From IMG/VR virus record IMGVR_UViG_3300042545_001134, positions 124,001 to 188,000 of that record: a stretch of DNA of 64,000 nt. One strand, written 5' to 3'. A program made the position numbers and the translations under genes. Every line of letters starts with the position of its first letter. Position 1 is the first letter of the stretch. The notes beneath the pieces were generated by a model. The model saw only the letters and a program-made list of their open reading frames with translations, had not been told where the DNA came from and ran no database searches. This document shows, piece by piece, positions 10,923-31,366 of this stretch.

Positions 10923-11036
10923 CTAATGATTGTAGGTAAAAGGGTCTCTTTTCTTTAATTCCCTTAGTTTTTCCCTGAATTTCTTCTTCCGTTTATAGTC
11001 TAACCAAATTCCTTTAATCCACTGTATTATTTTCAT
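10923..11036 (-). CDS. Small basic peptide (37 aa, KRDPFTY motif)
   Basis: Hand translation MKIIQWIKGIWLDYKRKKKFREKLRELKKRDPFTYNH*; ATGA overlap with the carbamoyltransferase stop. Confidence 0.65.
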   Translation of the reverse strand: MKIIQWIKGIWLDYKRKKKFREKLRELKKRDPFTYNH

Positions 11037-12703
11037 TTTTTTGTTATTATGTAGTTATTAATCACCAATATATCTATTTCGGTATCCAAAAATGTCTCTA
11101 CCGCATCTTGTGGGGTGAGTACCATAGTTTTATCTTTAATATTAAAAGATGTGTTAAGTAATATTGGATACCCTGTTATGATTTCAAACTTTTTTAATAG
11201 GTGGTATATGTCATTGTACGGTATAACGGATTGAATTCTTGCCGTCCCATCTACATGAACCACCGCCGGTAGTTTATCGATATATTTTTCTTCCACCTCT
11301 ACCACTTGGTTCATATAGGGAATGAAATCACCACTTTTAAAGTATTTCTTTTGTGATTCAAACAATACCATTGGGGCAAAGGGTCTAAACCCTTCTCTTT
11401 TTTTGATTACTTTGTTGATTCTATCCTTCATATTAGGTGAAGTCGGGTTCGCCAATATTGACCTATGACCTAACGCTCTAGAACCAAATTCAATCTTACC
11501 TTGAAACCACCCAACTATCTTGTTTCTTTTTAATTCCATCGCAATTTTATCATGAACTGATGTAATCGTTTCATATCTTTTATAAGTTATCCCATTTGTG
11601 TTTTTTAACACGTCAAGAATTTCCTCATTTGAGTATGATGGACCTAAAAAAGGATTCGTGTGAACCCTAACGGGTGTTTTCTTTTGATGAAAGTAATTTA
11701 AACATGCACCAATACAAGAACCCGCGTCAGATGGTGCTGGTGGGACCCACACGTTTTTAAAGTCAGTATTTTCTTTTATTTTCCCATTTGCGGTTCCGTT
11801 GTATGCGCATCCACCGGCCAATGCAAGATTTTTTGAATCACTGAATAAGTGAACATCCTTTAAAATCTCAAATAATACGTGTTCATACTTTTCTTGAACG
11901 GATGCTGCAATGTTTTTATGTTCCTGTGTTATATCTTCTTCGGGTAATCTATTTTCAACACCCATTAATTCAATCAAATCTTCGTTGAACATTAGGTCAT
12001 CTCTATCCCATGTGAAATAAATCATATTTGTTTTTAACGACACACAATTGTGTATCACCAACTTATCAATCTTATCTCTATATGGTTCGGGGTCCCCGTA
12101 AGATGCAAGTCCCATCATTTTATATTCACCTTCGTTTGGTTTAAATCCAAGGAACGATGTCATTGCAGAATAGAATAAACCAATTGAATGTGGGTAAACC
12201 GCCAGTGGTATAATCTTAAATGAATCTTTATTCACATATGCGGCCGATAATGTTTCCTTCTCACCAACACCGTCTACCGATAAGACAACACAATCTTTAA
12301 ATGGTGATGTGTAATATGAATAATATAAATGTGAATCGTGATGTTTTGAGTAGAAGATATTGTCTGATAACTTTCTCAACTCTCTTTCTAATGACCAATA
12401 ATTGTATTTGGTTCTTATTAGGGTTTTGGCAACATATATTGGACGCTCAATAAAATTTCTGAAGAATGTATTTTTAACTCTCTCAAGTTTAATTTTTGGG
12501 TCTTCATAATAACAAATCATTTCAACATCTTTCTTTTTGATGTTATATTTTTTGTAGATGTATTGTAACGTATTAACTGGAAATCTATAATCATGTTTTA
12601 CCCCTGTGAATTTTTCTTCTTCACATGCAAAAACCAACTCCCCATTTTTGAACAAACAGACAGATGAGTCATGATAATATGATGATATACCAATTACGTA
12701 CAT
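11033..12703 (-). CDS. Carbamoyltransferase (NodU/CmcH family)
   Basis: GISSYYHDSSVCL...EEEKFTGVKHD, HHDSH, SVDGVGE, LAGGCAYNG, GWFQGKIEFGSRALGHRSIL, KKREGFRPFAP, HVDGTARIQ, LLNTSFN. Confidence 0.95.
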   Translation of the reverse strand: MYVIGISSYYHDSSVCLFKNGELVFACEEEKFTGVKHDYRFPVNTLQYIYKKYNIKKKDVEMICYYEDPKIKLERVKNTFFRNFIERPIYVAKTLIRTKYNYWSLERELRKLSDNIFYSKHHDSHLYYSYYTSPFKDCVVLSVDGVGEKETLSAAYVNKDSFKIIPLAVYPHSIGLFYSAMTSFLGFKPNEGEYKMMGLASYGDPEPYRDKIDKLVIHNCVSLKTNMIYFTWDRDDLMFNEDLIELMGVENRLPEEDITQEHKNIAASVQEKYEHVLFEILKDVHLFSDSKNLALAGGCAYNGTANGKIKENTDFKNVWVPPAPSDAGSCIGACLNYFHQKKTPVRVHTNPFLGPSYSNEEILDVLKNTNGITYKRYETITSVHDKIAMELKRNKIVGWFQGKIEFGSRALGHRSILANPTSPNMKDRINKVIKKREGFRPFAPMVLFESQKKYFKSGDFIPYMNQVVEVEEKYIDKLPAVVHVDGTARIQSVIPYNDIYHLLKKFEIITGYPILLNTSFNIKDKTMVLTPQDAVETFLDTEIDILVINNYIITKK

Positions 12704-13842
12704 TATTTAATTCTTTTACCGTAGTAGATTGTATCTTTATGTACTCTTTCTCTCCATGGGTCTAAAACAATACTACCCATTGGAAATTCTGTTCCATTAA
12801 AAACATTTCTATGTCCTAATAAATAAATAGCGGGTTTGTTAATAGTGTCATATTCAACTTCCATAATAAAACTACCAATAAGTAATGAATATGAACCATC
12901 AATATATTCAACACCGGGTTTGTAACTCTTACCCATAATAACCACAGGTAAAGAATGTTCAACAGAAAGGTCAATTAATCTATTTGCCATGTTCTTTGCC
13001 TGTATTTCTCTCGACAACATAATTGAATCAAAAAGGTCATAACCTAAATCTAATTCTTTTGCCATGTATCTTAATGCAATATTGTCGCGAGGGTGACACG
13101 AACCTCCATCACCTAATCCCGCCTTCATATACGCGGGACCCGTAATGCGGTAGGTACTTCTTTCCAACGCACCCGTTACAATATCGGTATCCATATTACC
13201 ATTCTTTTCCGCAACATCCTGAATCATATTGACCAATGAAATCTTTGCGGATATGAATGTATTATAAAATATTTTAATTGCCTCAGCATCATCCCACGTA
13301 CCAATTTCATAACGAGTCCACGGTGTGATGAGTGTTTCGTAAAAATCTCTCAGTATTTTCGCATCGGTTGTTTCTGAACCATCCTCAGTCCCAATGATAA
13401 CCATTTCAGGATTTACCATATCGTTTTTTACGGTACCCATGGCAATAAGATATGGGTTGTAAATGAATCGATAATTCTTAACAAGTGGAATGAACTCTCT
13501 ACGAGTTGTTCCCGGTAGAACTGTTGAAATTAAAACAACCAATTGTTCTTTGGTTGTGTAATCGTTTATTTCATCTAAGATGTTCTTTACTGTCGTGTAA
13601 TCAAAATCCTTTGGGGTTAGATGTGATGTTGGGTGGCTACCATCATATAATGGGTCATGGGGTGTGGGTACCGCAATAAAGATTAAATCTTTACCGTTAC
13701 ACACTTCTTTTATGGTTGATACCATTTTAAAATTAGTGGGAGTCACTTCTCTAACATCGTAACCCTCAACAAAGTGTTTCTCCGCCATTACTTCCCCCAC
13801 ATCTTTTCCGAGTTTTCCAACTCCGATAAATCCTATTTTCAT
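12703..13842 (-). CDS. ugd: UDP-glucose/GDP-mannose dehydrogenase family protein
   Basis: Rossmann GFIGVGKLG, IAVPTP, ISTVLPGTT, YNPYLIAMG, AEAIKIFYNTF..KIS, GDGGSCHPRD with the catalytic Cys. Confidence 0.92.
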   Translation of the reverse strand: MKIGFIGVGKLGKDVGEVMAEKHFVEGYDVREVTPTNFKMVSTIKEVCNGKDLIFIAVPTPHDPLYDGSHPTSHLTPKDFDYTTVKNILDEINDYTTKEQLVVLISTVLPGTTRREFIPLVKNYRFIYNPYLIAMGTVKNDMVNPEMVIIGTEDGSETTDAKILRDFYETLITPWTRYEIGTWDDAEAIKIFYNTFISAKISLVNMIQDVAEKNGNMDTDIVTGALERSTYRITGPAYMKAGLGDGGSCHPRDNIALRYMAKELDLGYDLFDSIMLSREIQAKNMANRLIDLSVEHSLPVVIMGKSYKPGVEYIDGSYSLLIGSFIMEVEYDTINKPAIYLLGHRNVFNGTEFPMGSIVLDPWRERVHKDTIYYGKRIK

Positions 13843-14570
13843 AATACGTTATTTTTTAAATACGGAACAATTACTTCTTCCGAAAACTTTTTATGTCCAA
13901 ACTCAGTTGGGTGTATACCTCTATGTTCATAACCAACATGTCCATCAAATCCTAATTCGTTGTAGTTCTCTTTAACCCATTCATGACAACCACTCACGGG
14001 GAGGAACTTACTAAAATCAACCATATCAAATAGATATTTTACTTCGGGATGTGATATCAAAGTGTCTGCGCCATTTGCATGGAAAATATCCAAATATGAT
14101 GACATAAAATATTTGATACCTTTACGTTCCAAATACCATTGCACCATTAATATATTTTGCATGGTCATTAACATTGAACCAACATATGTATGTAGATTTT
14201 CGTACCAAATCTTTGCTTGGGGTATGTCCCACATATAGTTAGTTATAACCCAATTTTTTCTACCGTCAACAACATTAGTTGGGTTTTCAATCCATCCATT
14301 AATGTTTGATATTCTTTTTGAATCTTCAGTGTAAAAATCGTGTCGGTCAATACCACTCCACATGACACCAACAATAATGTCTTCAGGTTTGTGTGTCTCT
14401 AATAATTTATCTACTTGGTATATTACTTTTTTAGAAATTAATCCGTTACCCTGTGATGCCATCCCAACATTAACCAAATTGTAATCCATTTCATTACATA
14501 CAAATGTTGGCCAATTCCATGGTTCAAATGTGAAACTACATCCACTGGCAATTAGTGTTTTCTTATTCAT
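13839..14570 (-). CDS. SGNH/GDSL hydrolase-like protein
   Basis: LIASGCSFT (block I Ser), NVGMASQGNGLI (block II), C-terminal IHPTEFGH. Confidence 0.6.
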   Translation of the reverse strand: MNKKTLIASGCSFTFEPWNWPTFVCNEMDYNLVNVGMASQGNGLISKKVIYQVDKLLETHKPEDIIVGVMWSGIDRHDFYTEDSKRISNINGWIENPTNVVDGRKNWVITNYMWDIPQAKIWYENLHTYVGSMLMTMQNILMVQWYLERKGIKYFMSSYLDIFHANGADTLISHPEVKYLFDMVDFSKFLPVSGCHEWVKENYNELGFDGHVGYEHRGIHPTEFGHKKFSEEVIVPYLKNNVL

Positions 14571-15358
14571 TATATTAATTTTTTATTTATGTGTTCAAAC
14601 CAATTGTTTGATAATTGTTCCTGATACTCTAATGTGGTGTGGAATCTATATTTAATTGATGGGTCACTTCCCCGATATGTCCACGGGTTTAGTTTAGAAT
14701 CTAACATTATCATTCTATCACCAAAAAATTCAAACTCATTTGAATATAGATTTGTGTTTATACAATAGAATTCAATTCCGTTATCTAACAACTTTCTTAA
14801 CCCATTGGCAACAATCCAAGAGTCCTGTTGTGCTTTCCAATTGAAGTCGTAGAATCTATCAAACCATTCTTCTAAAATTCTAACCTCAGATTTGTTAAGT
14901 GTCTCCTTAGATTGGTTACCCCAAAAAAAGTTATTTAATGTTTCACTAATCATCTTAGGTGTTATCACTCCGAATCCCCCATGTTCCGAACTCTTATCGG
15001 GAAACCCAACATAATCTATGTTATATAGTCCATTGTTTGGTTCGTACATATTTGTTTTAAATTCCTCTTTAAATTTATCAAAATAATCTTCAGTCGTTAA
15101 GTCGTATATTGGGTATTCAAATCTATCTGGTGAGGTTAGACCAATAATCACCAAATCGGGTTTGTGTTTTATAATCTCATCGATTTGTAAACGAATAGTT
15201 TGATTACTACATCCACCTCGAGCATAGGTTACGACATTCCACCCAAGTTTTTCTCCCAGTAACTCAGTAAAATGTTTACCGTAACCATTATCTAAATCAT
15301 TTTCATTAAATGAAATTGCAGACATAAAACTATCACCACAAACACCTAAAGTTTTCAT
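14570..15358 (-). CDS. SGNH/GDSL hydrolase-like protein
   Basis: LGVCGDSFM, YARGGCSNQTI, C-terminal FHTTLEYQ. Confidence 0.55.
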   Translation of the reverse strand: MKTLGVCGDSFMSAISFNENDLDNGYGKHFTELLGEKLGWNVVTYARGGCSNQTIRLQIDEIIKHKPDLVIIGLTSPDRFEYPIYDLTTEDYFDKFKEEFKTNMYEPNNGLYNIDYVGFPDKSSEHGGFGVITPKMISETLNNFFWGNQSKETLNKSEVRILEEWFDRFYDFNWKAQQDSWIVANGLRKLLDNGIEFYCINTNLYSNEFEFFGDRMIMLDSKLNPWTYRGSDPSIKYRFHTTLEYQEQLSNNWFEHINKKLI

Positions 15359-16785
15359 ATTAATCTATTTGATATCTTTTTGTTTTCAAGTACTGTGAAA
15401 AGTTTAATAACCTCATGATTACTAATCATATTATTAAAATTATGAATTAATACTTCTTCCATTTCTTGGGTTACCTGATAACATTTATCCATATCCCACG
15501 ATGCAATTTCCTCCATTACACTGGTAATCATGTCCATTCTTTTCGTATAATTGGTCTCATTGTCATAACTTTCATCCCACCATTTGTCAAATGTTTTGAA
15601 CCCCAACTCTTTTAATTTTTTAATTGAGTATGGGTTACCAACAATAATGAATGGTTGACACGTATACATTGGTTTGTATGTCTTTTCAGAATAAAATATT
15701 GAACCTTCATCAATTAGAGATTCTGTAACCACATTTACAAAAGTGGTACTATGCGCTCCTTTACTCAAATTGGCCGCTTTGTTATTTTCTAAATCATTTT
15801 CATCGTACACGTAATGTTTTGATGAATCGTATGTGTTATAAAAATCTAATAGTCTTTTCTTTGAATGAACATAATACTCGCCTAAAGTTGCATTTAATAT
15901 GTTAAAAAATTCATGGTGGAACTTATTTTGTGAAGCACCTAAAGATTTAATTGATTTACCTATTAATTTTTCATTTGAAGATAATTCAGCAAACATAACC
16001 AGTCTATGTGGTTTAGTAACCCTATTAAAAGATAAAAAATGAAATTCTTTTTTAGTGGTTTTATTATTTTGTAAATACCAATTAAAGTTTTCTCTCATTT
16101 TTTCTTTTGTTTCATCCATTAAAATTCTACCACCGTCATGAAACCAAAGACTGTGTTGAAAATATGAGTATGGGTGTATAGTAAAATTGTCTCGGATTAA
16201 CCCGTCATTAAGTAATTTTGAATATCTATTAGTAGTCAAGAAATTAGACGTGATAACGATTACATCATCTTTATTGAAATCATATTTAGTTGATAAATTT
16301 GAAACCCATACATAATCGTTCATATTTTGTCCAAAAAATCCCTCTGTTGCCTGTATAATACACAATCTTGCTCTTTTATTTTTAATACATTCAACTAATT
16401 TATCATCTAAATCTATTGTTGGGTATTTTAAAAATAAGTCATTGTTATATAACACAATTGGGTAAACAAAACTTTTATCGGTTTCGTATATTTCATCTAA
16501 AGAAAATACTTTAAAATTACCATATGTGTTATCCAGTAAACCTTCAAAATTTTGACTATAAAATTTACACAAATACATCCTTAACTCATTAGAATCTTCG
16601 GACTTTAATCTATATGGAAATTTAATACCAAGTTCCTCCTCAATTTCATGTATTTTATCAAATTTAGCGGTGTGCCATGGGTGGATATCGTACTTCGCAA
16701 CATTTGAGTTGGGGTATAGAATTCTATTGTCTTCCGTATAAACCAAAATTTCGGAATATGCGACATTTATCTCAATATCTTTCAT
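15355..16785 (-). CDS. Putative glycosyltransferase (GT10/fucosyltransferase-like phage family)
   Basis: C-terminal FLSFNRVTKPHR, FVNVVTES, YSEKTYKP, PFIIVGNPYSIKKLKELGFKTFDKWWDESYD, resembling the GT10 ..SEK...A.....P region. Confidence 0.5.
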   Translation of the reverse strand: MKDIEINVAYSEILVYTEDNRILYPNSNVAKYDIHPWHTAKFDKIHEIEEELGIKFPYRLKSEDSNELRMYLCKFYSQNFEGLLDNTYGNFKVFSLDEIYETDKSFVYPIVLYNNDLFLKYPTIDLDDKLVECIKNKRARLCIIQATEGFFGQNMNDYVWVSNLSTKYDFNKDDVIVITSNFLTTNRYSKLLNDGLIRDNFTIHPYSYFQHSLWFHDGGRILMDETKEKMRENFNWYLQNNKTTKKEFHFLSFNRVTKPHRLVMFAELSSNEKLIGKSIKSLGASQNKFHHEFFNILNATLGEYYVHSKKRLLDFYNTYDSSKHYVYDENDLENNKAANLSKGAHSTTFVNVVTESLIDEGSIFYSEKTYKPMYTCQPFIIVGNPYSIKKLKELGFKTFDKWWDESYDNETNYTKRMDMITSVMEEIASWDMDKCYQVTQEMEEVLIHNFNNMISNHEVIKLFTVLENKKISNRLI

Positions 16786-18185
16786 TAAATCACAATTGTT
16801 TTACAAAAATTATAAAACTCCTCATATTCGGGGAATGTTTTACAGAAGTTAGTTCCTCTTCTTATATCATGTTCATTAAAGAACCTATAAAAATCTCTAC
16901 GATTTATCATTTGACGATAATCATCCTGTGGTGAAATCATCCAATCATAAATTCTCTTAATTTTTGGGATTTCCATTTGTGTAAAACCGTAACTAACCCC
17001 CTCTTTATTTAACCCAACATGAAATACTTCTTCATATGATTCCATTAAATCCCCATGACCCTTTACTAAACCACTAAAATTATGTGGTAAAACTTGTACA
17101 GTTTGATGTAACGGATACCTCAAGAATGATGAATCTAAAGAAACTGGTGTGGTCCATGCTCTTTGTGTTGATGCGTATTCCTTTTTAAGGTCGTAAACAC
17201 CACTAATCAATTTATCATAACTTAATACTGACAGTGCATTATAGGTGCTCATAATACCAATTGTCACAGTAGGACATTTAGTAAGTATTTTATTTAAGTT
17301 ATCCCAAAATTTGTTAAACACTAATCCGTGTCTACCGTATTCGGCGTGTTCACCCCAACCATCAACTGAGGTGAAAATAACAAAGTCTTTTACTCTTCGT
17401 TGGTCCTCGATTATATTGATTTTCTCAATTAGTTTATCAATTAAATTATCTGGTACACCTAAGTTACTATTAATAGCCAAGTGTAGATTTCTATTTGGTT
17501 CTTTTTGTTCGATTATATAATCTAAAACACCCCATGTATCCTTAGATAATAATGGCTCACCACCAGTGATTCTAAAAGTATCTAAGTCTCGATATAATTC
17601 GGGCCACCACTCCCAAAATGCATCAACATATGGGTTTGGTTCCGTTGCCTTAAATGGCATTCTATTTTCTTTCTTTAAATAATCTAACCCATTAAAGTTA
17701 GTAGTTGTTGGGTATGCTCCGTGACGTTCAATTTCTTGAACCCACTGTGATGAAAATGACGGACCGCAGTACGAACATTTAAAATTACATGTGTTTGAAA
17801 ATGCAACCTCAACGTAACGAGGGTTAAAATCTTCTCTCCAATCTGATTTTTTAATATCATCTAAAAGTGGTAATGACCATGGTTCGGCTGATTTAAATAT
17901 CCTATCCGAATGTTGGTCTGAATTATCTTCTACATTCCAACAATAAGCACATTCTGTTGGTCTACCGCCCTCTAACATTTCCTTTCTTTTCTCTTTTTTA
18001 AATTTAGTATTGTGTAGAGCAGAGGGGTTCCTTTTCAATTCGGATAAAGGGATAACGTGAGTATCGGGGTGGTGACATGAGTGTGTTCTACCCAATTGTA
18101 AGTGTATGGTTACTTGTGTCCATTTCGCAAGACAGAACCCGCAACCAACCTTATTTAATTCTTCTTTTATGTTATTTCGGTCCAT
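16785..18185 (-). CDS. Radical SAM protein with N-terminal auxiliary Cys cluster (twitch-like)
   Basis: CNFKCSYC (CxxxCxxC), ITGGEPLL; N-terminal CLAKW...SCHH...CAYCW. Confidence 0.88.
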   Translation of the reverse strand: MDRNNIKEELNKVGCGFCLAKWTQVTIHLQLGRTHSCHHPDTHVIPLSELKRNPSALHNTKFKKEKRKEMLEGGRPTECAYCWNVEDNSDQHSDRIFKSAEPWSLPLLDDIKKSDWREDFNPRYVEVAFSNTCNFKCSYCGPSFSSQWVQEIERHGAYPTTTNFNGLDYLKKENRMPFKATEPNPYVDAFWEWWPELYRDLDTFRITGGEPLLSKDTWGVLDYIIEQKEPNRNLHLAINSNLGVPDNLIDKLIEKINIIEDQRRVKDFVIFTSVDGWGEHAEYGRHGLVFNKFWDNLNKILTKCPTVTIGIMSTYNALSVLSYDKLISGVYDLKKEYASTQRAWTTPVSLDSSFLRYPLHQTVQVLPHNFSGLVKGHGDLMESYEEVFHVGLNKEGVSYGFTQMEIPKIKRIYDWMISPQDDYRQMINRRDFYRFFNEHDIRRGTNFCKTFPEYEEFYNFCKTIVI

Positions 18186-19602
18186 TTGTTTTTACGTTTA
18201 TTATCTTAGTGTTGTTGTAATTATAAGGATTTTCTTCAATATTTTGAATCGTTAAATTGTCCATAATTTGATTGAATCCATCATTTTTATAGTCTATTTT
18301 TCTTTGTTGCATTTCGGTAACAAATCTTTTTTCATTTCTCGCCGTGGTCTCACCCTTCACCCATCCTCCATTAACGAATCCCTCATCTTCATGTTGAAGG
18401 CATTGGAATGAACCTTCCCTTCTGTATGGGATAATATTTTCAATAATTTCAATATCCTCATCCTCAAATAAAATGTTATTTATGTCTCCATCTATTTCCT
18501 TTGTAAAGTTACAATCTAAAACTAAACTATCTACATCATCTTCCATTTTAGTGATATCATCAAAAAATCTGTTATATATCTTTATGTCCGCAATTTTACC
18601 TTTATAGTGGGTGTTTGATTGACCGCAGAATCCAATTAGAAACGGTTTAATTGATGTGTGTGACCTTAAATCTCCAGATATGGGAAATGGTATGTTTTGT
18701 TTAATACCGTCCATCTGAGAGATTAATTCATCGTTTATGTAAAAGTACATATTTTTCTCCTCACTATTGTAAGAAAGAGTCACTTGTGTCCATAGATTTT
18801 CAAATCTCTTGGCCCAATTGTAATTGAATTGATTTGACTTATCGAATAGAGTTGCGGTTACTGCTCTTGAATTATTAAATGAAATCCCCCAAGTACCACT
18901 ACCATCTTTTCTCAATAATGGGTATTCTATAAATTTTCTATTCTTATCCCCAACTAACCAAATTGGTGTCTTTTCGTCTTGTTGCTCGGCATTAAAAATG
19001 ATTGTTATTGTATGGTCATTATGTAAACAAGAATTACTTTCCCTGTTAGATAATATTTTAATCGATGAGTTTTCACCATTAAATTTGGCAACTCGTTTGT
19101 TGTTTATTTTTTTGTGTATTTTACCGGTGGTGTAATTTTCAAAATAACATCTCCAAAACAAATCATCATCCTCTTGACCCCAATCCCAATACTCGTTTGA
19201 ATATCCATTTGTTCTTTCAACATGTTCTTTGGTAAACAAAACAACCCCTCCGAAATATTGGTCATAACCTAATCCATATTGATATTTGGATAGTTTTGTT
19301 GCGATATGGATTGGGTTGTCTTTCGGATATGAATAATCGGGTAACGTATCCATATGTTTGGTATATGCTAACATATCAACATCGTGCCATGCAATATAAT
19401 CACAACCATCGTCAAATGCGAATTTGGCCGCAATGTTTTTCATCATACCCCTATTGAATAGATTATCATCCACCTGATGACCAACGTAAAATTTATGTTC
19501 AATACCTCTTTCATTTAGGTAGTTACTTAAATGTGGTACCAACCTATCGAGGTGTTCTTGTCTGTTTCTATATGGGATACAAATCCCTAATTTATGTGTC
19601 AT
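18172..19602 (-). CDS. GT7 (beta-1,4-galactosyltransferase-like) with inserted LamG-like domain
   Basis: IPYRNRQEHL, FNRGMMKN, HDVDM, YFGGV, GYSNEYWDWGQEDDDL; then about 220 aa LamG-like (KFNGENSSI...WTQVTLSY...YKGKIADIKIYNR); then PYRREGSFQCLQH. Confidence 0.85.
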   Translation of the reverse strand: MTHKLGICIPYRNRQEHLDRLVPHLSNYLNERGIEHKFYVGHQVDDNLFNRGMMKNIAAKFAFDDGCDYIAWHDVDMLAYTKHMDTLPDYSYPKDNPIHIATKLSKYQYGLGYDQYFGGVVLFTKEHVERTNGYSNEYWDWGQEDDDLFWRCYFENYTTGKIHKKINNKRVAKFNGENSSIKILSNRESNSCLHNDHTITIIFNAEQQDEKTPIWLVGDKNRKFIEYPLLRKDGSGTWGISFNNSRAVTATLFDKSNQFNYNWAKRFENLWTQVTLSYNSEEKNMYFYINDELISQMDGIKQNIPFPISGDLRSHTSIKPFLIGFCGQSNTHYKGKIADIKIYNRFFDDITKMEDDVDSLVLDCNFTKEIDGDINNILFEDEDIEIIENIIPYRREGSFQCLQHEDEGFVNGGWVKGETTARNEKRFVTEMQQRKIDYKNDGFNQIMDNLTIQNIEENPYNYNNTKIINVKTNGPK

Positions 19603-21011
19603 ATTCCTACTACAATATTTGTTTGATTCTCAACATTCGCAACACTATGTTGAATGTACTTACAAGTGGATAAACCATCTTCCTTTATGTTTCGATAACC
19701 TTTCATTACTTCATTGTAAAATCTTAATTGGTTAAACCTCGTCATGTCACTTCTCCAACCATCTTTAACAAAACCATTTTCTTCGTGGGTTAATAATTTG
19801 AATGTTGATTGTCTTCTAAATGGTACATCAATTGTTTTGAATTCATCATAGGTGTTACCAACAATCTCACAATTAATGATTTCCCCATCGTTTCCATTAC
19901 CAGATAAATCCATAAGTTTATAACCTTTAATGAATTTTGAATCATAATAAAGTTTCAATGCATAATCAGATGTATATCTTCCAAAACTTTGAGTTAAACC
20001 AAAATAATGATTGTCAGATATTTCCCTTATCTCAGCATATGATAATTCTTTATCGAAGACCGCAAATGAACTAATTAATCCTCTATAATAATTGTTTTCT
20101 CGGGTTCTATTTGGATTACCAACACCTAAATAAAAATGTGGTTCCTTTGTGTACTCGTATAATTTGGTGAACTTGTCTTGTGAAACCAAATCCCCATCCT
20201 GATAAAATTTAATTATCTTATCTGTTGGGTTAATGGTTACCGCAATATTGGTTCTATAATTTGTTTTTATATTTGAATATTGATATATGATATTTCTACC
20301 TCCATCAAAAATTTCCACTGTGTATCTTGAGTATGAGTTATATGTAATTGTGAAATCATAACCGGGTATGGTAAATAATGAATACTTATCACTTTTCTCC
20401 TCGAAGTCACAAACTAGTTCATCGGGGTAGAATGAAATGAATATTGTCATCTCCTCTCTTTGTTTGAAGAAGTTGTTACCCTTAACATATGCATCAACAC
20501 CATTAAATTTTAAAGATGCAACATTCCCACCCTTCATTTCAATTTTCTTTGTGTCGAGTGGAACTCCATTTACTTTACATCTAAAAAGTAAATCATCATC
20601 TTCGTAACCCCATCCCCAATAATCATTTGAATACCCATTTATATGTTCGAATGAATCAATAGGAAACATTGTTACCCCACCGAAGTAACCATCAAAGATT
20701 ACCCTATTTGTTTCACCAATAAAGTTTGTTGCCATTTGAATTGGTATGTCAGAATACGAATAATCAACATCAACTGGTAACATGTCTACATCGTGGAAAA
20801 CAACATAATCACATTTAATTTTCTTGGCATACAAAAATCCCACATTCAATAATTTACCTCTATTGAATGCAGAAGAATCGTCCTGTTCAACTACAATTAA
20901 CTCAAAATCAATTCCTTTATTTTTTAAGTAAGGTATAATTGATTGTTTAAACATTTGTAGATGTTCATAACGGTCTCTATATGGGACTATGACACCAAGT
21001 TTCTTATCCAT
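19599..21011 (-). CDS. GT7 (beta-1,4-galactosyltransferase-like) with inserted LamG-like domain, paralog
   Basis: VPYRDRYEHL, FNRGKLLNVG, FHDVDMLP, YFGGV, GYSNDYWGWGYEDDDL; LamG-like insert (KFNGVDAY...YRGLISSFAVFDKELS); then PFRRQSTFKLLTH. Confidence 0.87.
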   Translation of the reverse strand: MDKKLGVIVPYRDRYEHLQMFKQSIIPYLKNKGIDFELIVVEQDDSSAFNRGKLLNVGFLYAKKIKCDYVVFHDVDMLPVDVDYSYSDIPIQMATNFIGETNRVIFDGYFGGVTMFPIDSFEHINGYSNDYWGWGYEDDDLLFRCKVNGVPLDTKKIEMKGGNVASLKFNGVDAYVKGNNFFKQREEMTIFISFYPDELVCDFEEKSDKYSLFTIPGYDFTITYNSYSRYTVEIFDGGRNIIYQYSNIKTNYRTNIAVTINPTDKIIKFYQDGDLVSQDKFTKLYEYTKEPHFYLGVGNPNRTRENNYYRGLISSFAVFDKELSYAEIREISDNHYFGLTQSFGRYTSDYALKLYYDSKFIKGYKLMDLSGNGNDGEIINCEIVGNTYDEFKTIDVPFRRQSTFKLLTHEENGFVKDGWRSDMTRFNQLRFYNEVMKGYRNIKEDGLSTCKYIQHSVANVENQTNIVVGI

Positions 21012-21222
21012 TTATGGTTGGGTCTTTCGGTTTTGTGGTATCGTGCCACTCAGAAAGATAAAATTGAATTCTATCACTCCATTCTTTTTTATCAACCTCT
21101 TCAAACCAAACGGTTAGTGCATCTAAAGAGTTGGCAATTTTTTCCATTGCCTTAACTTTTCTTTGCTCAAGAAGTAGGAACTCATTTTGTTCTTCTGTCG
21201 TGTTTCCTTTTTTTACGGTCAT
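21004..21222 (-). CDS. Hypothetical protein (72 aa)
   Basis: ORF track; overlaps both neighbours in operon fashion. Confidence 0.6.
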   Translation of the reverse strand: MTVKKGNTTEEQNEFLLLEQRKVKAMEKIANSLDALTVWFEEVDKKEWSDRIQFYLSEWHDTTKPKDPTING

Positions 21223-22076
21223 ATTGATATGATTTTTTTAATTAATTTATTCCATTGTTTATACTGTTTGAATTCGGGTTTTGATGTATTTTTTTCAAAC
21301 ATGTATTCAGGTTCATTTAAATCTATTTTAAATTTTGATTTTCTCAATGATTCGTACATTTTTTTATACTCGGATGAATATGCGTATGGTTGATTGATTA
21401 ACGCAACATTTTTAACCCTCCCAATTGAATCTTTATCCCATTTAAAATGGTGAACCTGTATTGAATATGTATCAATTGGTGCAATCAGTGGGTGACTCCA
21501 ACCTTGCCATCTCCATGTGGTGTGACCATCTATTTTTGCATAGTGTTGACCATTTGTGATTTCAACATATCCTTTAACAACACAAATCTTATTGGGGCAG
21601 GCATCACTCATTGGATGTCTAAAGAAACCAGCATTTGGGTATTGTTTCCAAATAGATTCATTTGGTTGTAATTCTGAAAACTCCCCATCGGGTCCAATTC
21701 TATCAATAAATCCACCGCGTACAATATCCCAATTGTTTTTTTCACAATCAGATATTAATTGTTTTAAATTGTCTTTGGGGTATAGATGGAATTCATCGAT
21801 ATCGGCGATTACCCACCAATCATCAGGATAATCCTTTTTAATGTAGTTGTATGATTGAGTTACTTTTTCCCAATCAAAAACTCTTTCGTTGATTGTCTTA
21901 ACAATCTTTACATTGGTAAACTCGATAAGAATCTGACTAATTTCATCACCCAATTCTCGGTGTAAATCAGATTCGTATACAACGATGTTAATTTCGTCAA
22001 CATATTTTTCATAATGTTTTATAAAGTGGGGTAGTAACTTAGTTCCATGTCCAATTACAGTTAATAACCTTATCAT
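21219..22076 (-). CDS. GT-A fold glycosyltransferase (GT2/GT92-like)
   Basis: LLPHFIKHY, WWVIADIDEFH (DxDE motif), KICVVKG, HHFKW. Confidence 0.7.
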   Translation of the reverse strand: MIRLLTVIGHGTKLLPHFIKHYEKYVDEINIVVYESDLHRELGDEISQILIEFTNVKIVKTINERVFDWEKVTQSYNYIKKDYPDDWWVIADIDEFHLYPKDNLKQLISDCEKNNWDIVRGGFIDRIGPDGEFSELQPNESIWKQYPNAGFFRHPMSDACPNKICVVKGYVEITNGQHYAKIDGHTTWRWQGWSHPLIAPIDTYSIQVHHFKWDKDSIGRVKNVALINQPYAYSSEYKKMYESLRKSKFKIDLNEPEYMFEKNTSKPEFKQYKQWNKLIKKIISI

Positions 22077-22801
22077 TTTTTTCTATTTATAATCGTTATC
22101 CCCGTCGAAGACGGTTTTGAAGGAATAATACGAAAATTAAATAGATTAATCAAGTTCCACTCGGGATTTTCTTGTAGTTCTTTAATAAATTTGGACGGAC
22201 CGTCAAACTTATGGTAATCTTTTTTTGCATCTTCAGACACAATTAGATTCTTTTCATAGTTTTCATCGGTATCGTGAATAACAATCACCCCGTTTTCAGA
22301 TAATAAGGTGGAGTAAAGGTCAAAATCTAATTTTACACCCTCATAGGTGTGGTCTCCATCAATAAATAGGAAATCAATCTTAATATCTTGGAGAGTAAAA
22401 AAGTTATAAAAGGCGTTTTCTGAGGTATTTTTAATAAATCGTGGGTAAAACGTTTTTCTATAGAAAGAATCTTCATTTTCAAGGTCAGTTTCTCCACCAA
22501 CACCGTTACATGCGTCCACAACATAAGTTGCACCAATGTCACCCCAATTATAATCGGGATTCCCCTCAAAAATACCTTGTTTGTGAAGGTCAATACGTGA
22601 CTGTGTGATGATACGTGGAATGAATCCACCACCTGAACCGATACACACACAATTCTTTGCTCTCATGTGTTGTATTAGACTATAAACAACAATCCCATCA
22701 CCCATATGGAAATCGGTTGCACCGTGTGTCCAACGATAGGGAACGGGATTATCCTCGTTATTAGTAATAAAGTTCTTTATGTAGTCACTATTGGTAATCA
22801 C
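22073..22801 (-). CDS. Class I SAM-dependent methyltransferase (Methyltransf_24-like)
   Basis: VCIGSGGG, VVDA, IDFLFIDGDHTYEGVKLDFDLYSTLLSENGVIVIHD. Confidence 0.85.
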   Translation of the reverse strand: MITNSDYIKNFITNNEDNPVPYRWTHGATDFHMGDGIVVYSLIQHMRAKNCVCIGSGGGFIPRIITQSRIDLHKQGIFEGNPDYNWGDIGATYVVDACNGVGGETDLENEDSFYRKTFYPRFIKNTSENAFYNFFTLQDIKIDFLFIDGDHTYEGVKLDFDLYSTLLSENGVIVIHDTDENYEKNLIVSEDAKKDYHKFDGPSKFIKELQENPEWNLINLFNFRIIPSKPSSTGITIINRKK

Positions 22802-25166: not shown

Positions 25167-25169
25167 ATC

Positions 25170-26381
25170 TTAAATAAACTTAGATTTTGTATTTGTATAT
25201 AGTTTATTAATTTCAGTTGCATTCAACACTTCATTGTATACCATAGATAGTGGTAATTTACCTTCATATGATGAGTGGTATTCTCTACCAATCATCGCGG
25301 TCGACGCTCTCGCAGTTCCACCCAAAAATCCCGTATTGGCACTATTAATCGATTGACCATTCAAATAAAGAATTAAACCTCCCGCTATATTGTAGGTACA
25401 CGCTAACATATTCCAAGAATTTAATGGTGTACTTCCACCTCCAAGTAAATAATCATTTGCCCCATTATTGTTACCAACCCATGCGGCCAAACCACCATGA
25501 TAATAACTCATTAATTTAACACCATGTCTATATGCTGTATCAGTACAAATTATTGTTCTATGTGGTGCACCTGTTCCACCATTCCAATAAAACCAACCAG
25601 CAAGTGTTACATCACCGGTTATTGTACTTATTGGTCCGTTTGTGATGACACCATAACTATTCGAACCATCAAAATATATCTGACCATTATTATCGAATCC
25701 ACCATTGGTCATTGTCACCGTTGAATTACCTGTTACATCGACAATTGCATTTGTTGTACTTCTTGTTCCTAAAACTAAAGATGTCATGTGGTTTTTTTGT
25801 TCGACTTGATGTCCAAAATACCATATTTTATCCCCAATATATGTTCCTATGTAGTTACTAATATAAATTCCATCCTCGTTAGCTGCTGTGGTTCCACTTG
25901 CAGTTATTTTTATCCATTGATTGGCTGGCCATGTACTTGTATCTGTATTTCCATTATAAGCCAAATTGGCTAAACCCACATTTGTAATATTGGTTCTTAA
26001 ATATGGTTGGGACGCACCTGCCCTGCTTTGTCTGTACCATACTGAAACGGTATATGTTGTTGATGGGGATACGTATGTAAACCCACACCCAAATTGTACA
26101 CTCCCACCCGTTGCGGTACTTCTTCCACTTAATACTCTAAGGTTTGTGGCATCAACCCCCGGAGTTGATGGTTTTGGAACATCGGTTTCGTTATCGTTGT
26201 ATTCCCATGAACCCACATTCACCCATGATATTGGTGCTGCCAAATATTCACTACCACCTTGACCATTATTATATGAAAGGTTGGTTGTTGGTTCTCCTTT
26301 AAATGAGTTTGCAGTGTCAGTTACATCGTAACTGAATATCAATCCACTATTGTTAATATTTGGTCCTAAACTTTGTGACAT
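25170..26381 (-). CDS. LamG/ConA-like lectin protein with CBM-like insert
   Basis: GLIFSYD..NSFKGEPTTN, TYTVSVWYR, QVEQKNH, YFDGSNSY, WNMLACTY, YEGKLPLSMVYN. Confidence 0.8.
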   Translation of the reverse strand: MSQSLGPNINNSGLIFSYDVTDTANSFKGEPTTNLSYNNGQGGSEYLAAPISWVNVGSWEYNDNETDVPKPSTPGVDATNLRVLSGRSTATGGSVQFGCGFTYVSPSTTYTVSVWYRQSRAGASQPYLRTNITNVGLANLAYNGNTDTSTWPANQWIKITASGTTAANEDGIYISNYIGTYIGDKIWYFGHQVEQKNHMTSLVLGTRSTTNAIVDVTGNSTVTMTNGGFDNNGQIYFDGSNSYGVITNGPISTITGDVTLAGWFYWNGGTGAPHRTIICTDTAYRHGVKLMSYYHGGLAAWVGNNNGANDYLLGGGSTPLNSWNMLACTYNIAGGLILYLNGQSINSANTGFLGGTARASTAMIGREYHSSYEGKLPLSMVYNEVLNATEINKLYTNTKSKFI

Positions 26382-27088: not shown

Positions 27089-27100
27089 ATCTTAAATACT

Positions 27101-30444: not shown

Positions 30445-30632
30445 TAAACGTTAATTTTTTCTACCTCAGTTATGTCCCATAAATTACCCATTTGATTTTC
30501 AAAATCAACGAATATTTGGTCACCATATATTGGGCAATAAATTTCCCAATTACTTTCGAAATCAATCTCACCTTCTGAGGTTTTGATTATTCTCTTATAC
30601 TTGTCTTCTTTTATGTGGAACTCTAATTTCAT
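30444..30632 (-). CDS. Hypothetical protein (62 aa)
   Basis: ORF track; TAATG coupling to the downstream gene. Confidence 0.6.
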   Translation of the reverse strand: MKLEFHIKEDKYKRIIKTSEGEIDFESNWEIYCPIYGDQIFVDFENQMGNLWDITEVEKINV

Positions 30633-30638
30633 AATATT

Positions 30639-31337: not shown

Positions 31338-31355
31338 ATCTTATTCTTATATTAT

Positions 31356-31362: not shown

Positions 31363-31366
31363 CCTT

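What the first reader, a model, noticed from the sequence alone, without database searches (positions are those of the whole stretch)
11033..22801. 12 kb phage glycan-building and decorating operon next to the receptor-binding genes
Eleven translationally coupled genes: SAM methyltransferase, GT-A, a small ORF, two GT7, radical SAM, GT10-like, two SGNH-like (possible O-acyl transfer or removal), UDP-glucose dehydrogenase and carbamoyltransferase. This is enough to make a uronate-containing, methylated, acylated and carbamoylated glycan. Its position between the lectin array and the giant fibre suggests virion glycosylation or host-surface remodelling. NodU-family enzymes also carbamoylate 5-hmC in some phage DNA, but no hydroxymethylase is in this window.
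Basis: partly seen in the sequence, partly recalled or inferred. Interest (0 to 1): 0.6.

Follow-up and report, generated by a model that had tools for sequence, protein, structure and literature searches.

The report
Phage sugar-chain-building operon beside tail fibres
A large uncultured T4-like phage carries an intact 11-gene operon of soluble sugar-building enzymes next to its fibre genes; its seven-gene core recurs in hundreds of uncultured aquatic phages but in no sequenced isolate, and what it glycosylates is still unknown.

Summary
Window 11033-22801 (minus strand) contains eleven intact ORFs, and every junction overlaps by 1-14 nt. The "GT10-like" gene is a GT-B glycosyltransferase of unresolved family. 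The two "SGNH-like" genes are DUF6071-type proteins with an SGNH-like Ser/Asn/His signature.

New findings:
- The first seven genes form a conserved cassette: methyltransferase, GT-A, a 72-aa helical protein, two GT7, an N-terminal-twitch radical SAM enzyme and a GT-B.
- The radical SAM has relatives at 403 places in IMG/VR, and 60-70 of the 80 loci fetched hold the cassette. It usually sits downstream of tail-fibre genes and is followed by a variable set of sugar-tailoring genes.
- The GT7 and GT-A genes have no match in 50,697 deposited phage genomes.
- Each GT7 catalytic domain is split by an inserted lectin-like domain.
- All eleven products are predicted soluble, and the genome encodes no flippase-, polymerase- or initiating-transferase-like membrane protein.
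- The only thymidylate-synthase homologue is canonical, and no TET/JBP or C5-methylase gene exists. DNA glycosylation or carbamoylation is therefore unlikely.

My best reading is cytoplasmic glycosylation of phage structural proteins (about 0.4). Host-surface remodelling is a close rival (about 0.3). This is a new variant of the known glycan clusters in aquatic myophage host-recognition regions.

The parts
22073..22801 (-). g1: class I SAM-dependent methyltransferase (Methyltransf_24), 242 aa, GTG start. First gene of the conserved core.
   Evidence: Pfam E 4e-13. Homologues at 44-75% identity in 63 of 80 related loci, aligning from residue 2-4 onward, which supports the GTG start.
21219..22076 (-). 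g2: GT-A-type glycosyltransferase (GT2/GT92-like), 285 aa. Core gene.
   Evidence: GT2_4 at 25.9 bits, just under the 27.5 cut-off. ESM Atlas look-alikes (score 0.97) are viral GT92/GT2 clusters. Present in 69 of 80 loci at 40-68% identity. 46 invariant columns, including a DxDE motif. No match in 50,697 phage records.
21004..21222 (-). g3: 72-aa acidic, Cys-free protein. Core gene of unknown role, always found directly upstream of a GT7 gene.
   Evidence: Present in 69 of 80 loci at 36-82% identity. Conserved core sequence LEeRKVKALEKIAnSLDALTiWFEEIDKdEWSdRiQYYL, with variable termini. Helical character is judged from the sequence pattern and was not modelled.
19599..21011 (-). g4: GT7 (beta4GalT-like) glycosyltransferase with an internal ConA/LamG-like domain, 470 aa. 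Core gene.
   Evidence: Glyco_transf_7N E 8e-22, 7C E 3e-16, Laminin_G_3 E 7e-9. Paralogue of g5 (32% identity).
18172..19602 (-). g5: second GT7 glycosyltransferase, 476 aa. The catalytic domain (residues about 1-160 and about 395-476) is split by an inserted ConA/LamG-like domain (about 165-390). Core gene.
   Evidence: PDB beta4GalT7 at E 3e-31, with HDVD and WGxEDDD motifs. AF2 model pLDDT 89.8. VIA Z 26.9 and 26.4 to beta4GalT1 and beta4GalT7, with 216-219 residues aligned across model 1..476. Z about 20 to LamG domains over residues 167-430. No match in the phage collection.
16785..18185 (-). g6: radical SAM enzyme with an N-terminal twitch-type auxiliary-cluster domain (N_Twi_rSAM), 466 aa. 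The most conserved core gene.
   Evidence: NF033640 at 342 bits (cut-off 170). Conserved C18/C37/C79/C82 plus C133-x3-C137-x2-C140. 403 IMG/VR places encode a relative; the best 80 are 59-76% identical. The only isolate with a homologue is Ralstonia phage RsoM2USA, at 40%.
15355..16785 (-). g7: GT-B fold glycosyltransferase, 476 aa, with a poorly modelled N-terminal 90 aa. Last gene of the core.
   Evidence: No Pfam family above threshold. AF2 pTM 0.81. Foldseek and VIA hits are all GT-B enzymes: Z 12.6 T4 BGT, 12.3 GtfC, 11.8 H. pylori alpha1,3-FucT, all tied within 1 Z. Homologues in 62 of 80 loci.
14570..15358 (-). g8: DUF6071-related, SGNH-like protein (GDS motif at residues 8-10), 262 aa. 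Variable tailoring part.
   Evidence: GDSL_2 E 1e-4, below cut-off. hhalign to the g9 family: probability 97%, E 3e-11. Atlas look-alikes are viral clusters, some of them DUF6071. Found in only 3 of 80 loci.
13839..14570 (-). g9: DUF6071, SGNH-like protein, 243 aa. Variable tailoring part.
   Evidence: DUF6071 at 30.2 bits (cut-off 27). Ser12 and His220 are invariant and Asn34 nearly so across the family. The family profile hits GDSL and acetyl-esterases in the PDB only weakly (E 0.009-0.04). Found in 28 of 80 loci.
12703..13842 (-). g10: NDP-sugar 6-dehydrogenase (UDP-glucose dehydrogenase-like), 379 aa. Variable tailoring part.
   Evidence: Pfam N-terminal and central domains. phrog_9148 at 308 bits. 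TIGR03026 at 137 bits, below its 189.8 cut-off. GxGxxG motif and catalytic Cys in GGSCHPRD. About 70% identical copies in 4 related loci.
11033..12703 (-). g11: NodU/CmcH/TobZ-family O-carbamoyltransferase, 556 aa. Last gene of the operon.
   Evidence: Carbam_trans_N 215 bits and Carbam_trans_C 211 bits. HHDSH motif. 28-35% identical to the carbamoyltransferases of RsoM2USA, pelagiphage HTVC008M and cyanophages.
23214..37491 (-). Context: array of twelve paralogous Laminin_G_3 (ConA-like) proteins directly upstream, on the same strand.
   Evidence: Pfam. PHROG 'virion structural protein' phrog_8510. All-against-all BLAST at 24-41% identity.
2..7969 (-). Context: N-terminal 2656 aa of a 4057-aa ORF (genome 119796-131969) with tail-fibre-type repeats, downstream on the same strand.
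   Evidence: PHROG tail-fibre families phrog_23820 and phrog_8713.

Best explanation
This is a soluble, cytoplasmic glycan-assembly operon made of two parts.

Part 1 (g1-g7) is a conserved cassette that moves horizontally between phages. It holds a methyltransferase, a GT-A, a small protein, two GT7 enzymes whose catalytic domain carries an inserted lectin-like domain next to the acceptor side, an N-twitch radical SAM enzyme and a GT-B. I infer that it builds a conserved core oligosaccharide containing a radical-SAM-modified and/or methylated sugar.

Part 2 (g8-g11) is a lineage-specific tailoring set: two SGNH-like acyl-handling proteins, an NDP-sugar 6-dehydrogenase and an O-carbamoyltransferase. 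I infer that it supplies a uronic acid and adds acyl and carbamoyl groups.

I commit to a phage-encoded structural protein as the most likely acceptor (fibre or other virion surface protein). On this reading the glycan is added in the cytoplasm during assembly, giving a virion glycan with a constant core and a variable periphery.

Shown: gene integrity, family and fold assignments, conservation, synteny, solubility, and the absence of a DNA-base hydroxylation route. Inferred: the order of reactions, the sugars used, and above all the acceptor.
For: - The operon is intact and tightly packed. Catalytic motifs are preserved: DxD and WGxEDDD in GT7, seven conserved Cys in the radical SAM, the catalytic Cys in the dehydrogenase and HHDSH in the carbamoyltransferase.
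- Core plus variable-tail architecture: g1-g7 recur in 62-80 of 80 loci, while g8, g10 and g11 occur in 3-9 (g9 in 28). They are replaced elsewhere by SDR, RmlC-like, TPP, second radical SAM and HAD genes.
- No cassette protein has a predicted TM segment, and no ORF in the 93%-complete genome has more than three. The phage therefore encodes no initiating phosphoglycosyl transferase, flippase, polymerase or ligase.
- The cassette is co-directional with fibre genes and 19-30 nt from them here. In 26 of the 46 related loci with at least 3 kb upstream, recognisable tail-fibre or virion genes are held in the locus; those mapped lie upstream of the cassette.
- In RsoM2USA, the only isolate with the radical SAM, the gene lies just downstream of the MS-confirmed virion proteins ORF356, 359 and 361, with an NDP-sugar epimerase among them (citing PMC8504454, 123).
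- Cassette proteins are about twice as conserved as the capsid protein between this phage and complete cassette-bearing genomes (radical SAM 65-66% and g3 66-82%, against MCP 32-33%). The cassette's GC (31-33%) is below its flanks (36-40%) and close to the relatives' median of 30%. This fits a self-contained module whose substrate travels with it.
- Precedent for virion glycosylation by phage GTs next to structural genes exists in mycobacteriophages (Freeman et al. 2023, as cited in PMC12619734).
Against: - No acceptor was identified.
- Soluble GTs also act on undecaprenyl-linked intermediates at the inner membrane face, so the lack of membrane proteins does not exclude host-glycan remodelling.
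- The published interpretation of similar clusters in pelagimyophages and cyanophages is host O-chain or cell-wall modification (PMC7029224; PMC12801897), although that interpretation is untested.
- Both phage lineages compared may infect related Bacteroidota hosts, which weakens the argument that the target is independent of the host.
- The inserted LamG domains show no close similarity to those of the neighbouring fibre paralogues.
- There is no evidence on expression timing. The T4 late-promoter motif is not enriched.
Confidence: 0.4

Rival explanations
1. Host-surface remodelling. The enzymes hijack the host's lipid-carrier pathway and alter LPS O-chain, capsule or an S-layer/glycoprotein glycan during infection, for example to block superinfection or to prevent progeny re-adsorbing to lysing cells.
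For: - The enzyme repertoire here and in relatives (NDP-sugar dehydrogenase, SDR, RmlC-like, several GTs, O-acyl and O-carbamoyl tailoring) looks like an O-antigen or capsule locus.
- The variable-tail architecture resembles O-antigen diversity.
- This is the interpretation given for the glycosyltransferase-rich 'host recognition cluster' of pelagimyophages and for cyanophage cell-wall genes.
- In a Bdellovibrionaceae genome the radical SAM homologues sit beside GT2, GDP-mannose dehydratase and epimerase genes.
Against: - No initiating transferase, flippase, polymerase, ligase or Gtr-type membrane protein exists anywhere in the genome.
- A core conserved at 60-76% identity across phages whose capsids are only about 32% identical would need the same host acceptor in all of their hosts.
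- The published host-modification reading has never been tested.
Confidence: 0.3
2. DNA hypermodification. The GTs, carbamoyltransferase and methyltransferase decorate a hydroxylated or hydroxymethylated base in phage DNA, as in T-even glucosyl-hmC, RB69/DLP3 arabinosyl-5hoC or TET-dependent pathways.
For: - This is a T4-like phage.
- The g7 model's tied best structural matches include the T4 beta- and alpha-glucosyltransferases.
- PHROG labels g1's nearest family 'DNA methyltransferase', weakly.
- Multi-sugar DNA glycans do exist in Straboviridae (PMC13326640).
Against: - The only Thymidylat_synt-family gene in the genome has the canonical Leu143 and Asn177 (LPPCH, PFNIASY) and matches true thymidylate synthases best (criteria).
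- There is no Tet_JBP and no C5 DNA methylase.
- A complete cassette-bearing genome (G003, 201,940 bp) has no TS-family gene at all, and two others have canonical ones.
- The cluster sits in the fibre region and not in the replication/nucleotide region where the known DNA-glycosylation clusters lie.
- The T4 BGT match is no better than the match to any other GT-B enzyme.
Confidence: 0.07
3. A free or secreted glycoconjugate or small molecule, for example an aminoglycoside- or oligosaccharide-like metabolite or signal made during infection, with no macromolecular acceptor.
For: TobZ/NodU-type carbamoyltransferases, twitch-domain radical SAM enzymes (BtrN-type chemistry, from general knowledge), methyltransferases and soluble GTs are typical of aminoglycoside and Nod-factor pathways. 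All the enzymes here are soluble.
Against: - There are no aminotransferase, cyclase or export genes in the operon.
- Four GTs, two of them with lectin-like inserts, suggest an oligosaccharide built on a large acceptor.
- The constant association with fibre genes would be left unexplained.
Confidence: 0.08

Closest known systems
Glycosyltransferase/LPS-gene-rich 'host recognition cluster' of metagenomic pelagimyophages, and the cell-wall/LPS gene clusters of large T4-like cyanophages (P-SSM2, S-SCSM1, S-SCSM2R)
   Same: All are T4-like aquatic phages. The cluster sits in the hypervariable tail-fibre region. It holds several GTs, a UDP-glucose dehydrogenase, NDP-sugar epimerases and radical SAM cassettes, and the function is untested (PMC7029224; PMC12801897). 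The carbamoyltransferase is 28-35% identical to those of these phages.
   Different: The core genes here (GT7 with inserted LamG, the GT92-like GT-A, the N-twitch radical SAM) have no tblastn match in any cyanophage or pelagiphage isolate. The dominant GT family reported for pelagimyophages is GT8. This phage's capsid is nearest to Flavobacterium phage immuto and Rhodothermus phage RM378, not to pelagi- or cyanomyophages.
Mycobacteriophage virion O-glycosylation (Che8, Corndog and Myrna type; Freeman et al. 2023, cited)
   Same: Phage-encoded soluble GTs, with methyltransferases (from my own knowledge), lie next to structural genes. They would modify virion proteins in the cytoplasm.
   Different: The enzyme families are unrelated, and there are far more genes here: a radical SAM, a dehydrogenase, a carbamoyltransferase and a lectin-inserted GT7. 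No acceptor tail was identified, and no experimental evidence exists for this cassette.
Animal beta-1,4-galactosyltransferases (CAZy GT7: beta4GalT1, beta4GalT7)
   Same: 35-39% identity over the first ~158 aligned residues (29-32% over the 216-219 residues aligned structurally). The GT-A fold matches at Z about 26.5 and rmsd 2.1 A. The DVD and WGxEDDD motifs are kept.
   Different: The catalytic domain is interrupted by a lectin-like ConA/LamG domain of about 225 residues. There is no membrane anchor or stem. The genes are phage-encoded and occur as tandem paralogues. Donor and acceptor are unknown.
T-even and RB69/DLP3 DNA glycosylation clusters
   Same: T4-like phage carrying several GT-B or GT-A enzymes and sugar-nucleotide genes.
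   Different: The defining TS homologue with N177D and L143D/E is absent, and the genomic location differs.
Ralstonia jumbo phage RsoM2USA, ORF349 region
   Same: This is the only isolate with a homologue of the radical SAM (40% identity). It also encodes a carbamoyltransferase (32%). The radical SAM gene lies just downstream of confirmed virion genes, with an NDP-sugar epimerase among them.
   Different: It has no GT7, GT-A, g3 or g7 homologues. All the neighbours are annotated as hypothetical, and its carbamoyltransferase is about 94 kb away from the radical SAM.

Membership tests
CAZy GT7 / beta4GalT-like (g4, g5) | Pfam Glyco_transf_7N and 7C above their gathering scores | tested here: met
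   g4: 77.7 and 59.1 bits. g5: 57.3 and 68.5 bits. Cut-offs are 27 and 23.
CAZy GT7 / beta4GalT-like (g4, g5) | GT-A fold with the DxD metal motif and the WGxEDDD motif | tested here: met
   HDVDML and WDWGQEDDD align to beta4GalT7. Z 26.4-26.9, rmsd 2.1 A, 216-219 residues aligned.
CAZy GT7 / beta4GalT-like (g4, g5) | Contiguous catalytic domain | tested here: not met
   A ConA/LamG domain (about residues 165-390) is inserted. The beta4GalT alignment spans model residues 1..476 around it. This makes it an architectural variant of the family.
CAZy GT7 / beta4GalT-like (g4, g5) | Inverting beta-1,4 transfer of Gal or GalNAc from a UDP-sugar | not testable with these tools
   Needs an enzyme assay.
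N_Twi_rSAM (NF033640) radical SAM (g6) | Score above the curated cut-off, the CX3CX2C motif, and an N-terminal auxiliary-cluster Cys set | tested here: met
   342 bits against 170. C133/C137/C140 and C18/C37/C79/C82 are conserved in 79 sequences.
NodU/CmcH/TobZ O-carbamoyltransferase (g11) | Both the Carbam_trans_N (Kae1-like) and Carbam_trans_C (YrdC-like) domains | tested here: met
   214.6 and 211.2 bits. HHDSH motif.
NodU/CmcH/TobZ O-carbamoyltransferase (g11) | NodU equivalog (NF041651) cut-off | tested here: not met
   170.6 bits against 1000. It is a family member but not a NodU orthologue, and the substrate is unknown.
UDP-glucose/GDP-mannose dehydrogenase family (g10) | N-terminal NAD domain, central domain and catalytic Cys | tested here: met
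   Pfam 57.6 and 64.2 bits. GVGKLG motif and GGSCHPRD. phrog_9148 at 308 bits.
UDP-glucose/GDP-mannose dehydrogenase family (g10) | C-terminal UDP-binding domain, and the subfamily or equivalog cut-offs that would fix UDP-glucose specificity | tested here: not met
   UDPG_MGDP_dh_C was not reported. TIGR03026 scored 137 against a cut-off of 189.8, and all equivalogs score far below theirs. 'Uronate-forming' is likely, but the sugar is not established.
SGNH/GDSL hydrolase superfamily (g8, g9) | Profile match above cut-off | tested here: inconclusive
   g8 GDSL_2 scored 23.1 against 32.9. g9 matches DUF6071 (30.2 against 27), not an SGNH model. The family profile hits GDSL esterases in the PDB only at E 0.009-0.04.
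SGNH/GDSL hydrolase superfamily (g8, g9) | Catalytic Ser (block I), Gly/Asn and His (block V) conserved | tested here: met
   Ser12 and His220 are invariant and Asn34 and Gly10 nearly so in 31 sequences. GDS is present in g8. The fold was not modelled.
CAZy GT10 fucosyltransferase (g7) | Sequence-profile match to Glyco_transf_10 | tested here: not met
   No such Pfam hit at E<=0.01. The family profile finds no GT in the PDB sequences.
CAZy GT10 fucosyltransferase (g7) | GT-B fold closest to alpha1,3-FucT | tested here: inconclusive
   The GT-B fold is clear, but FucT (Z 11.8) is tied with T4 BGT (12.6), GtfC (12.3), exostosin and TarM.
Phage DNA glycosylation systems (hmC, 5hoC, TET-dependent) | TS homologue with N177D and L143D/E, or TET/JBP dioxygenase plus C5 methylase | tested here: not met
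   The single TS homologue has L143 and N177. Tet_JBP and DNA_methylase are absent. A complete cassette genome has no TS homologue.
Host O-antigen/capsule modification (serotype-conversion type) | Phage-encoded membrane components (Gtr-type GT, flippase, polymerase, acyltransferase_3) or an initiating polyprenyl-P transferase | tested here: not met
   A hydropathy scan found no ORF with more than 3 TM segments in the genome, and none in the operon. The scan is crude, and use of host components is not excluded.
Phage virion glycosylation systems | GT genes embedded in or adjacent to the structural module | tested here: met
Phage virion glycosylation systems | Glycan demonstrably attached to a virion protein | not testable with these tools
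   Needs virions. The phage is uncultured.

The most novel reading that the evidence does not exclude
A horizontally mobile seven-gene cassette lets a broad group of uncultured aquatic T4-like phages glycosylate their own fibres or virion surface. The cassette comprises a methyltransferase, a GT92-like GT-A, a small adaptor protein, two lectin-inserted GT7 enzymes, an N-twitch radical SAM and a GT-B, and it is absent from every sequenced isolate. The glycan would have a conserved core and a lineage-specific periphery, with the radical SAM enzyme performing a sugar modification not yet described. This would be the first virion-glycan system in Gram-negative-infecting myophages and a new layer of host-range and defence-evasion variation.
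Probability: 0.3. Interest if true: 0.75.

Novelty: new variant of a known kind. Interest (0 to 1): 0.55.

Why it matters
Glycan gene clusters in the tail-fibre regions of marine and freshwater myophages have been noted for twenty years and are routinely labelled 'LPS genes', yet their target has never been tested.

This analysis turns one such cluster into a defined, testable unit. It has a seven-gene core found in hundreds of uncultured phages, with intact catalytic motifs and an unusual GT7 architecture. No membrane machinery accompanies it, and no route to a modified DNA base exists in the genome.

If the target is the virion, phage surface glycans would become a general variable in adsorption, in recognition by host defences and grazers, and in phage ecology beyond mycobacteriophages. 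If the target is the host envelope, the cassette would be a widespread superinfection-exclusion device. Either way, the N-twitch radical SAM and the lectin-inserted GT7 are new enzymology targets.

Tried and rejected
- **Megablast of the whole region against 50,697 phage records:** no match.
- **Complex prediction of g3 with g4:** no verdict (score 0.00). This is not evidence either way.
- **T4 late-promoter motif TATAAATA:** 13 hits in the window against 11.2 expected. Only 9 of 350 genome ORFs have it upstream, so it is uninformative on timing. The generic promoter/terminator scan was at chance level.
- **c2, a roughly 250-aa gene that follows the radical SAM in most relatives:** it is absent here and is not homologous to g8 (hhalign probability 0.4%). 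It has no Pfam or PDB match.
- **Profiles of g2 and g7 against PDB sequences:** nothing meaningful.
- **The idea that the GT7 LamG inserts were copied from the neighbouring LamG fibre paralogues:** no significant similarity.
- **Homologues in this genome of the genes that flank the cassette in relatives (c8, c14/15/12, c39, c16, c32):** none found.
- **Bacterial context of the radical SAM family:** sugar-nucleotide neighbours in one Bdellovibrionaceae genome, but many paralogues with mixed neighbours in Halobacteriovorax, so not decisive.
- **Pelagimyophage markers:** S21 present, CsgG absent. The capsid places the phage nearer the Flavobacterium phage immuto / RM378 group.
- **Whether this phage is one of the published 'moraphages':** could not be determined.
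- not used.

Full report
**1. The observation**

The window is bases 124001-188000 of a single 310,691-bp virus record with 34.7% GC, estimated 93% complete. The record encodes a T4-type gp23 major capsid protein (213 bits), so 'phage' is correct.

Between 22801 and 11033 on the minus strand lie eleven ORFs. All ten internal junctions overlap, by 1-14 nt. A 19-nt gap separates the first ORF from the preceding gene, and a 150-nt gap follows the last. No Shine-Dalgarno-like sequence is visible upstream of any start.

**2. What each gene is**

| Gene | Coordinates | Assignment | Evidence |
|---|---|---|---|
| g1 | 22073-22801 | Methyltransf_24 methyltransferase | |
| g2 | 21219-22076 | GT-A enzyme; just under the GT2_4 cut-off; nearest Atlas clusters are viral GT92/GT2 | |
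| g3 | 21004-21222 | 72-aa acidic, Cys-free protein | |
| g4, g5 | 19599-21011, 18172-19602 | True GT7 enzymes; both Pfam halves above cut-off; beta4GalT7 at E 3e-31 with DVD and WGxEDDD motifs | |
| g6 | 16785-18185 | Radical SAM of NCBIfam family N_Twi_rSAM (342 bits, cut-off 170); CX3CX2C plus four conserved N-terminal Cys | |
| g7 | 15355-16785 | No Pfam family; folds as a GT-B glycosyltransferase | |
| g8, g9 | 14570-15358, 13839-14570 | One DUF6071-type family with conserved Ser/Asn/His and only weak links to GDSL esterases | |
| g10 | 12703-13842 | NDP-sugar 6-dehydrogenase with catalytic Cys; below the cut-offs that would fix UDP-glucose specificity | |
| g11 | 11033-12703 | Full-length NodU/TobZ-family O-carbamoyltransferase | |

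Two points need more detail.

The g5 model is confident (pLDDT 89.8). It shows that the Laminin_G_3 region is not a C-terminal appendage. The beta4GalT alignment runs from residue 1 to 476, with 216-219 residues aligned (Z 26-27, rmsd 2.1 A). Residues of roughly 165-390 form a separate ConA/LamG domain (Z about 20) inserted into the catalytic domain.

For g7, the best structural matches are tied: T4 BGT Z 12.6, GtfC 12.3, H. pylori fucosyltransferase 11.8. 'GT10-like' therefore cannot be upheld beyond 'GT-B'.

None of the eleven proteins has a predicted transmembrane segment.

**3. Context**

Upstream, on the same strand, lie a 120-aa ORF and then twelve paralogous Laminin_G_3 proteins at 23214-37491. 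These resemble PHROG 'virion structural protein' families. Downstream lie a Cys-rich 92-aa ORF, a 637-aa unknown ORF, an opposite-strand GNAT gene, and a 4057-aa ORF with tail-fibre repeats.

**4. Relatives**

The radical SAM protein has relatives at 403 places in IMG/VR. The best 80 are 59-76% identical. In those 80 loci the other genes recur as follows:

| Gene | g1 | g2 | g3 | g4 | g5 | g7 | g8 | g9 | g10 | g11 |
|---|---|---|---|---|---|---|---|---|---|---|
| Loci with a homologue (of 80) | 63 | 69 | 69 | 77 | 78 | 62 | 3 | 28 | 9 | 3 |

Gene order is conserved: methyltransferase, GT-A, small protein, two (occasionally one or three) GT7, radical SAM, usually an unknown gene of about 250 aa that is absent here, then the GT-B. 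A variable stretch follows, and 97% of ORFs are co-directional. In relatives the variable stretch encodes SDR epimerase/dehydratases, an RmlC-like epimerase, a TPP-dependent E1-like protein, a second radical SAM, a HAD phosphatase and more DUF6071 proteins. The operon is therefore a conserved core (g1-g7) plus a lineage-specific tailoring set (g8-g11).

Upstream neighbours in relatives include tail-fibre proteins and a virion structural protein. At least one of these is held in 26 of the 46 loci with at least 3 kb upstream, and in the loci mapped they lie upstream of the cassette.

Three complete cassette-bearing genomes (288.7, 287.5 and 201.9 kb) also encode gp23. Their capsid protein is only 32-33% identical to this phage's, whereas the radical SAM is 65-66% and g3 is 66-82% identical. 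The operon's GC (31-33%) is below that of its flanks (36-40%) and near the relatives' median of 30%. Together these point to horizontal movement of the cassette between divergent T4-like lineages.

Among 50,697 deposited phage genomes, g5 and g2 have no tblastn match. The radical SAM has a full-length match (98% of the query) only in Ralstonia jumbo phage RsoM2USA, at 40% identity; two Vibrio phages give a partial match at 26% over 44% of it. In RsoM2USA the gene lies just downstream of the MS-confirmed virion proteins ORF356, 359 and 361, with an NDP-sugar epimerase among them.

Capsid similarity places this phage and its cassette-bearing relatives nearest Flavobacterium phage vB_FspM_immuto, Rhodothermus phage RM378, Microcystis phage Mel-JY01 and an uncultured huge phage. 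A Bacteroidota host is plausible but not shown.

Contigs carrying the whole cassette also sit in MAGs labelled Pelagibacter, Flavobacteriales and Gammaproteobacteria. They are probably binned phage contigs.

**5. Testing the DNA-modification alternative**

The genome has one Thymidylat_synt-family gene, outside the window at genome 102,906-103,946. It matches true thymidylate synthases best (237 bits). It keeps the residues that a recent study uses to separate dTMP synthases from dCMP hydroxymethylases and 5-hydroxy-dCMP synthases: Leu143 (LPPCH) and Asn177 (PFNIASY). Tet_JBP and C5 DNA methylase families are absent.

Of three complete cassette-bearing genomes, one has no TS-family gene, and two have the same canonical residues. 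The known DNA-glycosylation clusters lie in the replication region next to their TS homologue, whereas this one lies among fibre genes. I rate DNA modification at about 0.07.

**6. Virion or host surface?**

A hydropathy scan of all 350 ORFs finds none with more than three hydrophobic segments. The phage therefore brings no initiating transferase, flippase, polymerase, ligase or Gtr-type enzyme.

Four lines of evidence favour a phage-encoded protein acceptor glycosylated in the cytoplasm:
- the purely soluble enzyme set;
- the constant association with fibre genes;
- a core that is more conserved than the capsid protein;
- the lectin-like domain beside the GT7 acceptor side, whose analogy with lectin-bearing polypeptide GalNAc-transferases is my inference only.

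Four points count against this:
- soluble GTs routinely act on lipid-linked intermediates;
- the enzyme repertoire looks like an O-antigen locus;
- the literature reads comparable clusters in pelagimyophages and cyanophages as host O-chain or cell-wall modification, though without tests;
- no acceptor was identified.

I put virion or phage-protein glycosylation at about 0.4, host-surface remodelling at about 0.3, a free glycoconjugate at about 0.08, and DNA at about 0.07. The remainder is unassigned.

**7. Comparison with what is known, and novelty**

The general kind is already described: glycan-gene clusters in the tail-fibre 'host recognition' region of aquatic T4-like phages (PMC7029224; PMC12801897). 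Four core glycosyltransferase groups in large Bacteroidota 'moraphages' may be related (PMC12619734).

I found the following in no paper searched and in no deposited phage genome:
- the delimitation of a conserved, mobile seven-gene core;
- the absence of that core from all isolates;
- the GT7 catalytic domain split by a lectin-like insert;
- the pairing with an N-twitch radical SAM and a conserved 72-aa protein.

I class it as a new variant of a known kind. Interest is 0.55.

**8. Limits**

- Sugar identities, reaction order, the role of g3 and of the radical SAM, expression timing and the acceptor are all inferred or unknown.
- The TM scan is crude.
- Only the 80 closest of the 403 related places were examined.
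- The complex prediction for g3 with g4 returned no verdict.

Noticed in passing
window 23214-37491 (-): Twelve tandem paralogues (232-689 aa), most with a C-terminal Laminin_G_3 domain. Several share a 51-56% identical N-terminal stretch of about 40 aa, which looks like a diversified set of fibre or decoration proteins with a common attachment end.
   Followed up: partly
genome C1:102906-103946 (-), locus L001:868-2160: The thymidylate synthase homologue is 430 aa, with two insertions of about 40-45 aa (after residues ~223 and ~333) relative to solved ThyA structures. The catalytic and specificity residues are canonical.
   Followed up: partly
window 10604-10882 (-): A 92-aa ORF with six Cys, arranged like a zinc ribbon (CAEC...CGECGC), sits right after the operon and overlaps the next ORF (637 aa, 15 Cys, no family) by 1 nt. 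It matches phrog_13558 (unknown function).
   Followed up: no
window 8066-8542 (+): A GNAT acetyltransferase lies on the opposite strand between the operon region and the giant fibre gene, with a TATAAATA motif ending 4 nt before its ATG. It could supply or compete for acyl groups, or be unrelated.
   Followed up: no
genome C1:280791-280940 (+): A ribosomal protein S21 gene (36 bits) lies a few kb from the capsid gene. CsgG is absent.
   Followed up: partly
L003 (IMGVR_UViG_3300042997_001281, 245,393 bp): A second IMG/VR record is 100% identical (at protein level) over the whole operon and its flanks but has a different contig length (245 kb against 310 kb). It is either the same phage assembled twice or a near-identical strain.
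   Followed up: no
L086, L087, L089, L093 (genome contigs): Short contigs (10-23 kb) carrying most or all of the cassette are binned in MAGs labelled Pelagibacter, Pelagibacterales, Gammaproteobacteria and Flavobacteriales. They are probably phage contigs mis-binned into bacterial MAGs.
   Followed up: partly
G005 (genome of L091, Halobacteriovorax marinus) and L090 (Bdellovibrionaceae MAG): Predatory bacteria carry many N_Twi_rSAM paralogues: five above cut-off in one Halobacteriovorax genome and a tandem pair in a Bdellovibrionaceae MAG. The tandem pair sits next to GT2, GDP-mannose dehydratase and SPASM radical SAM genes.
   Followed up: partly
related loci, e.g. L011:11368-12126 and L011:403-1383: Two further families travel with the cassette in most relatives but are missing here. 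One is a protein of about 250 aa directly after the radical SAM (64 loci). The other is a protein of about 330 aa upstream of the methyltransferase (34 loci). Neither has a Pfam, PHROG or PDB match.
   Followed up: partly
window 50828-52051 (-): A 407-aa ORF with three predicted hydrophobic segments, the joint most in this genome (a 79-aa ORF also has three); it was not examined.
   Followed up: no
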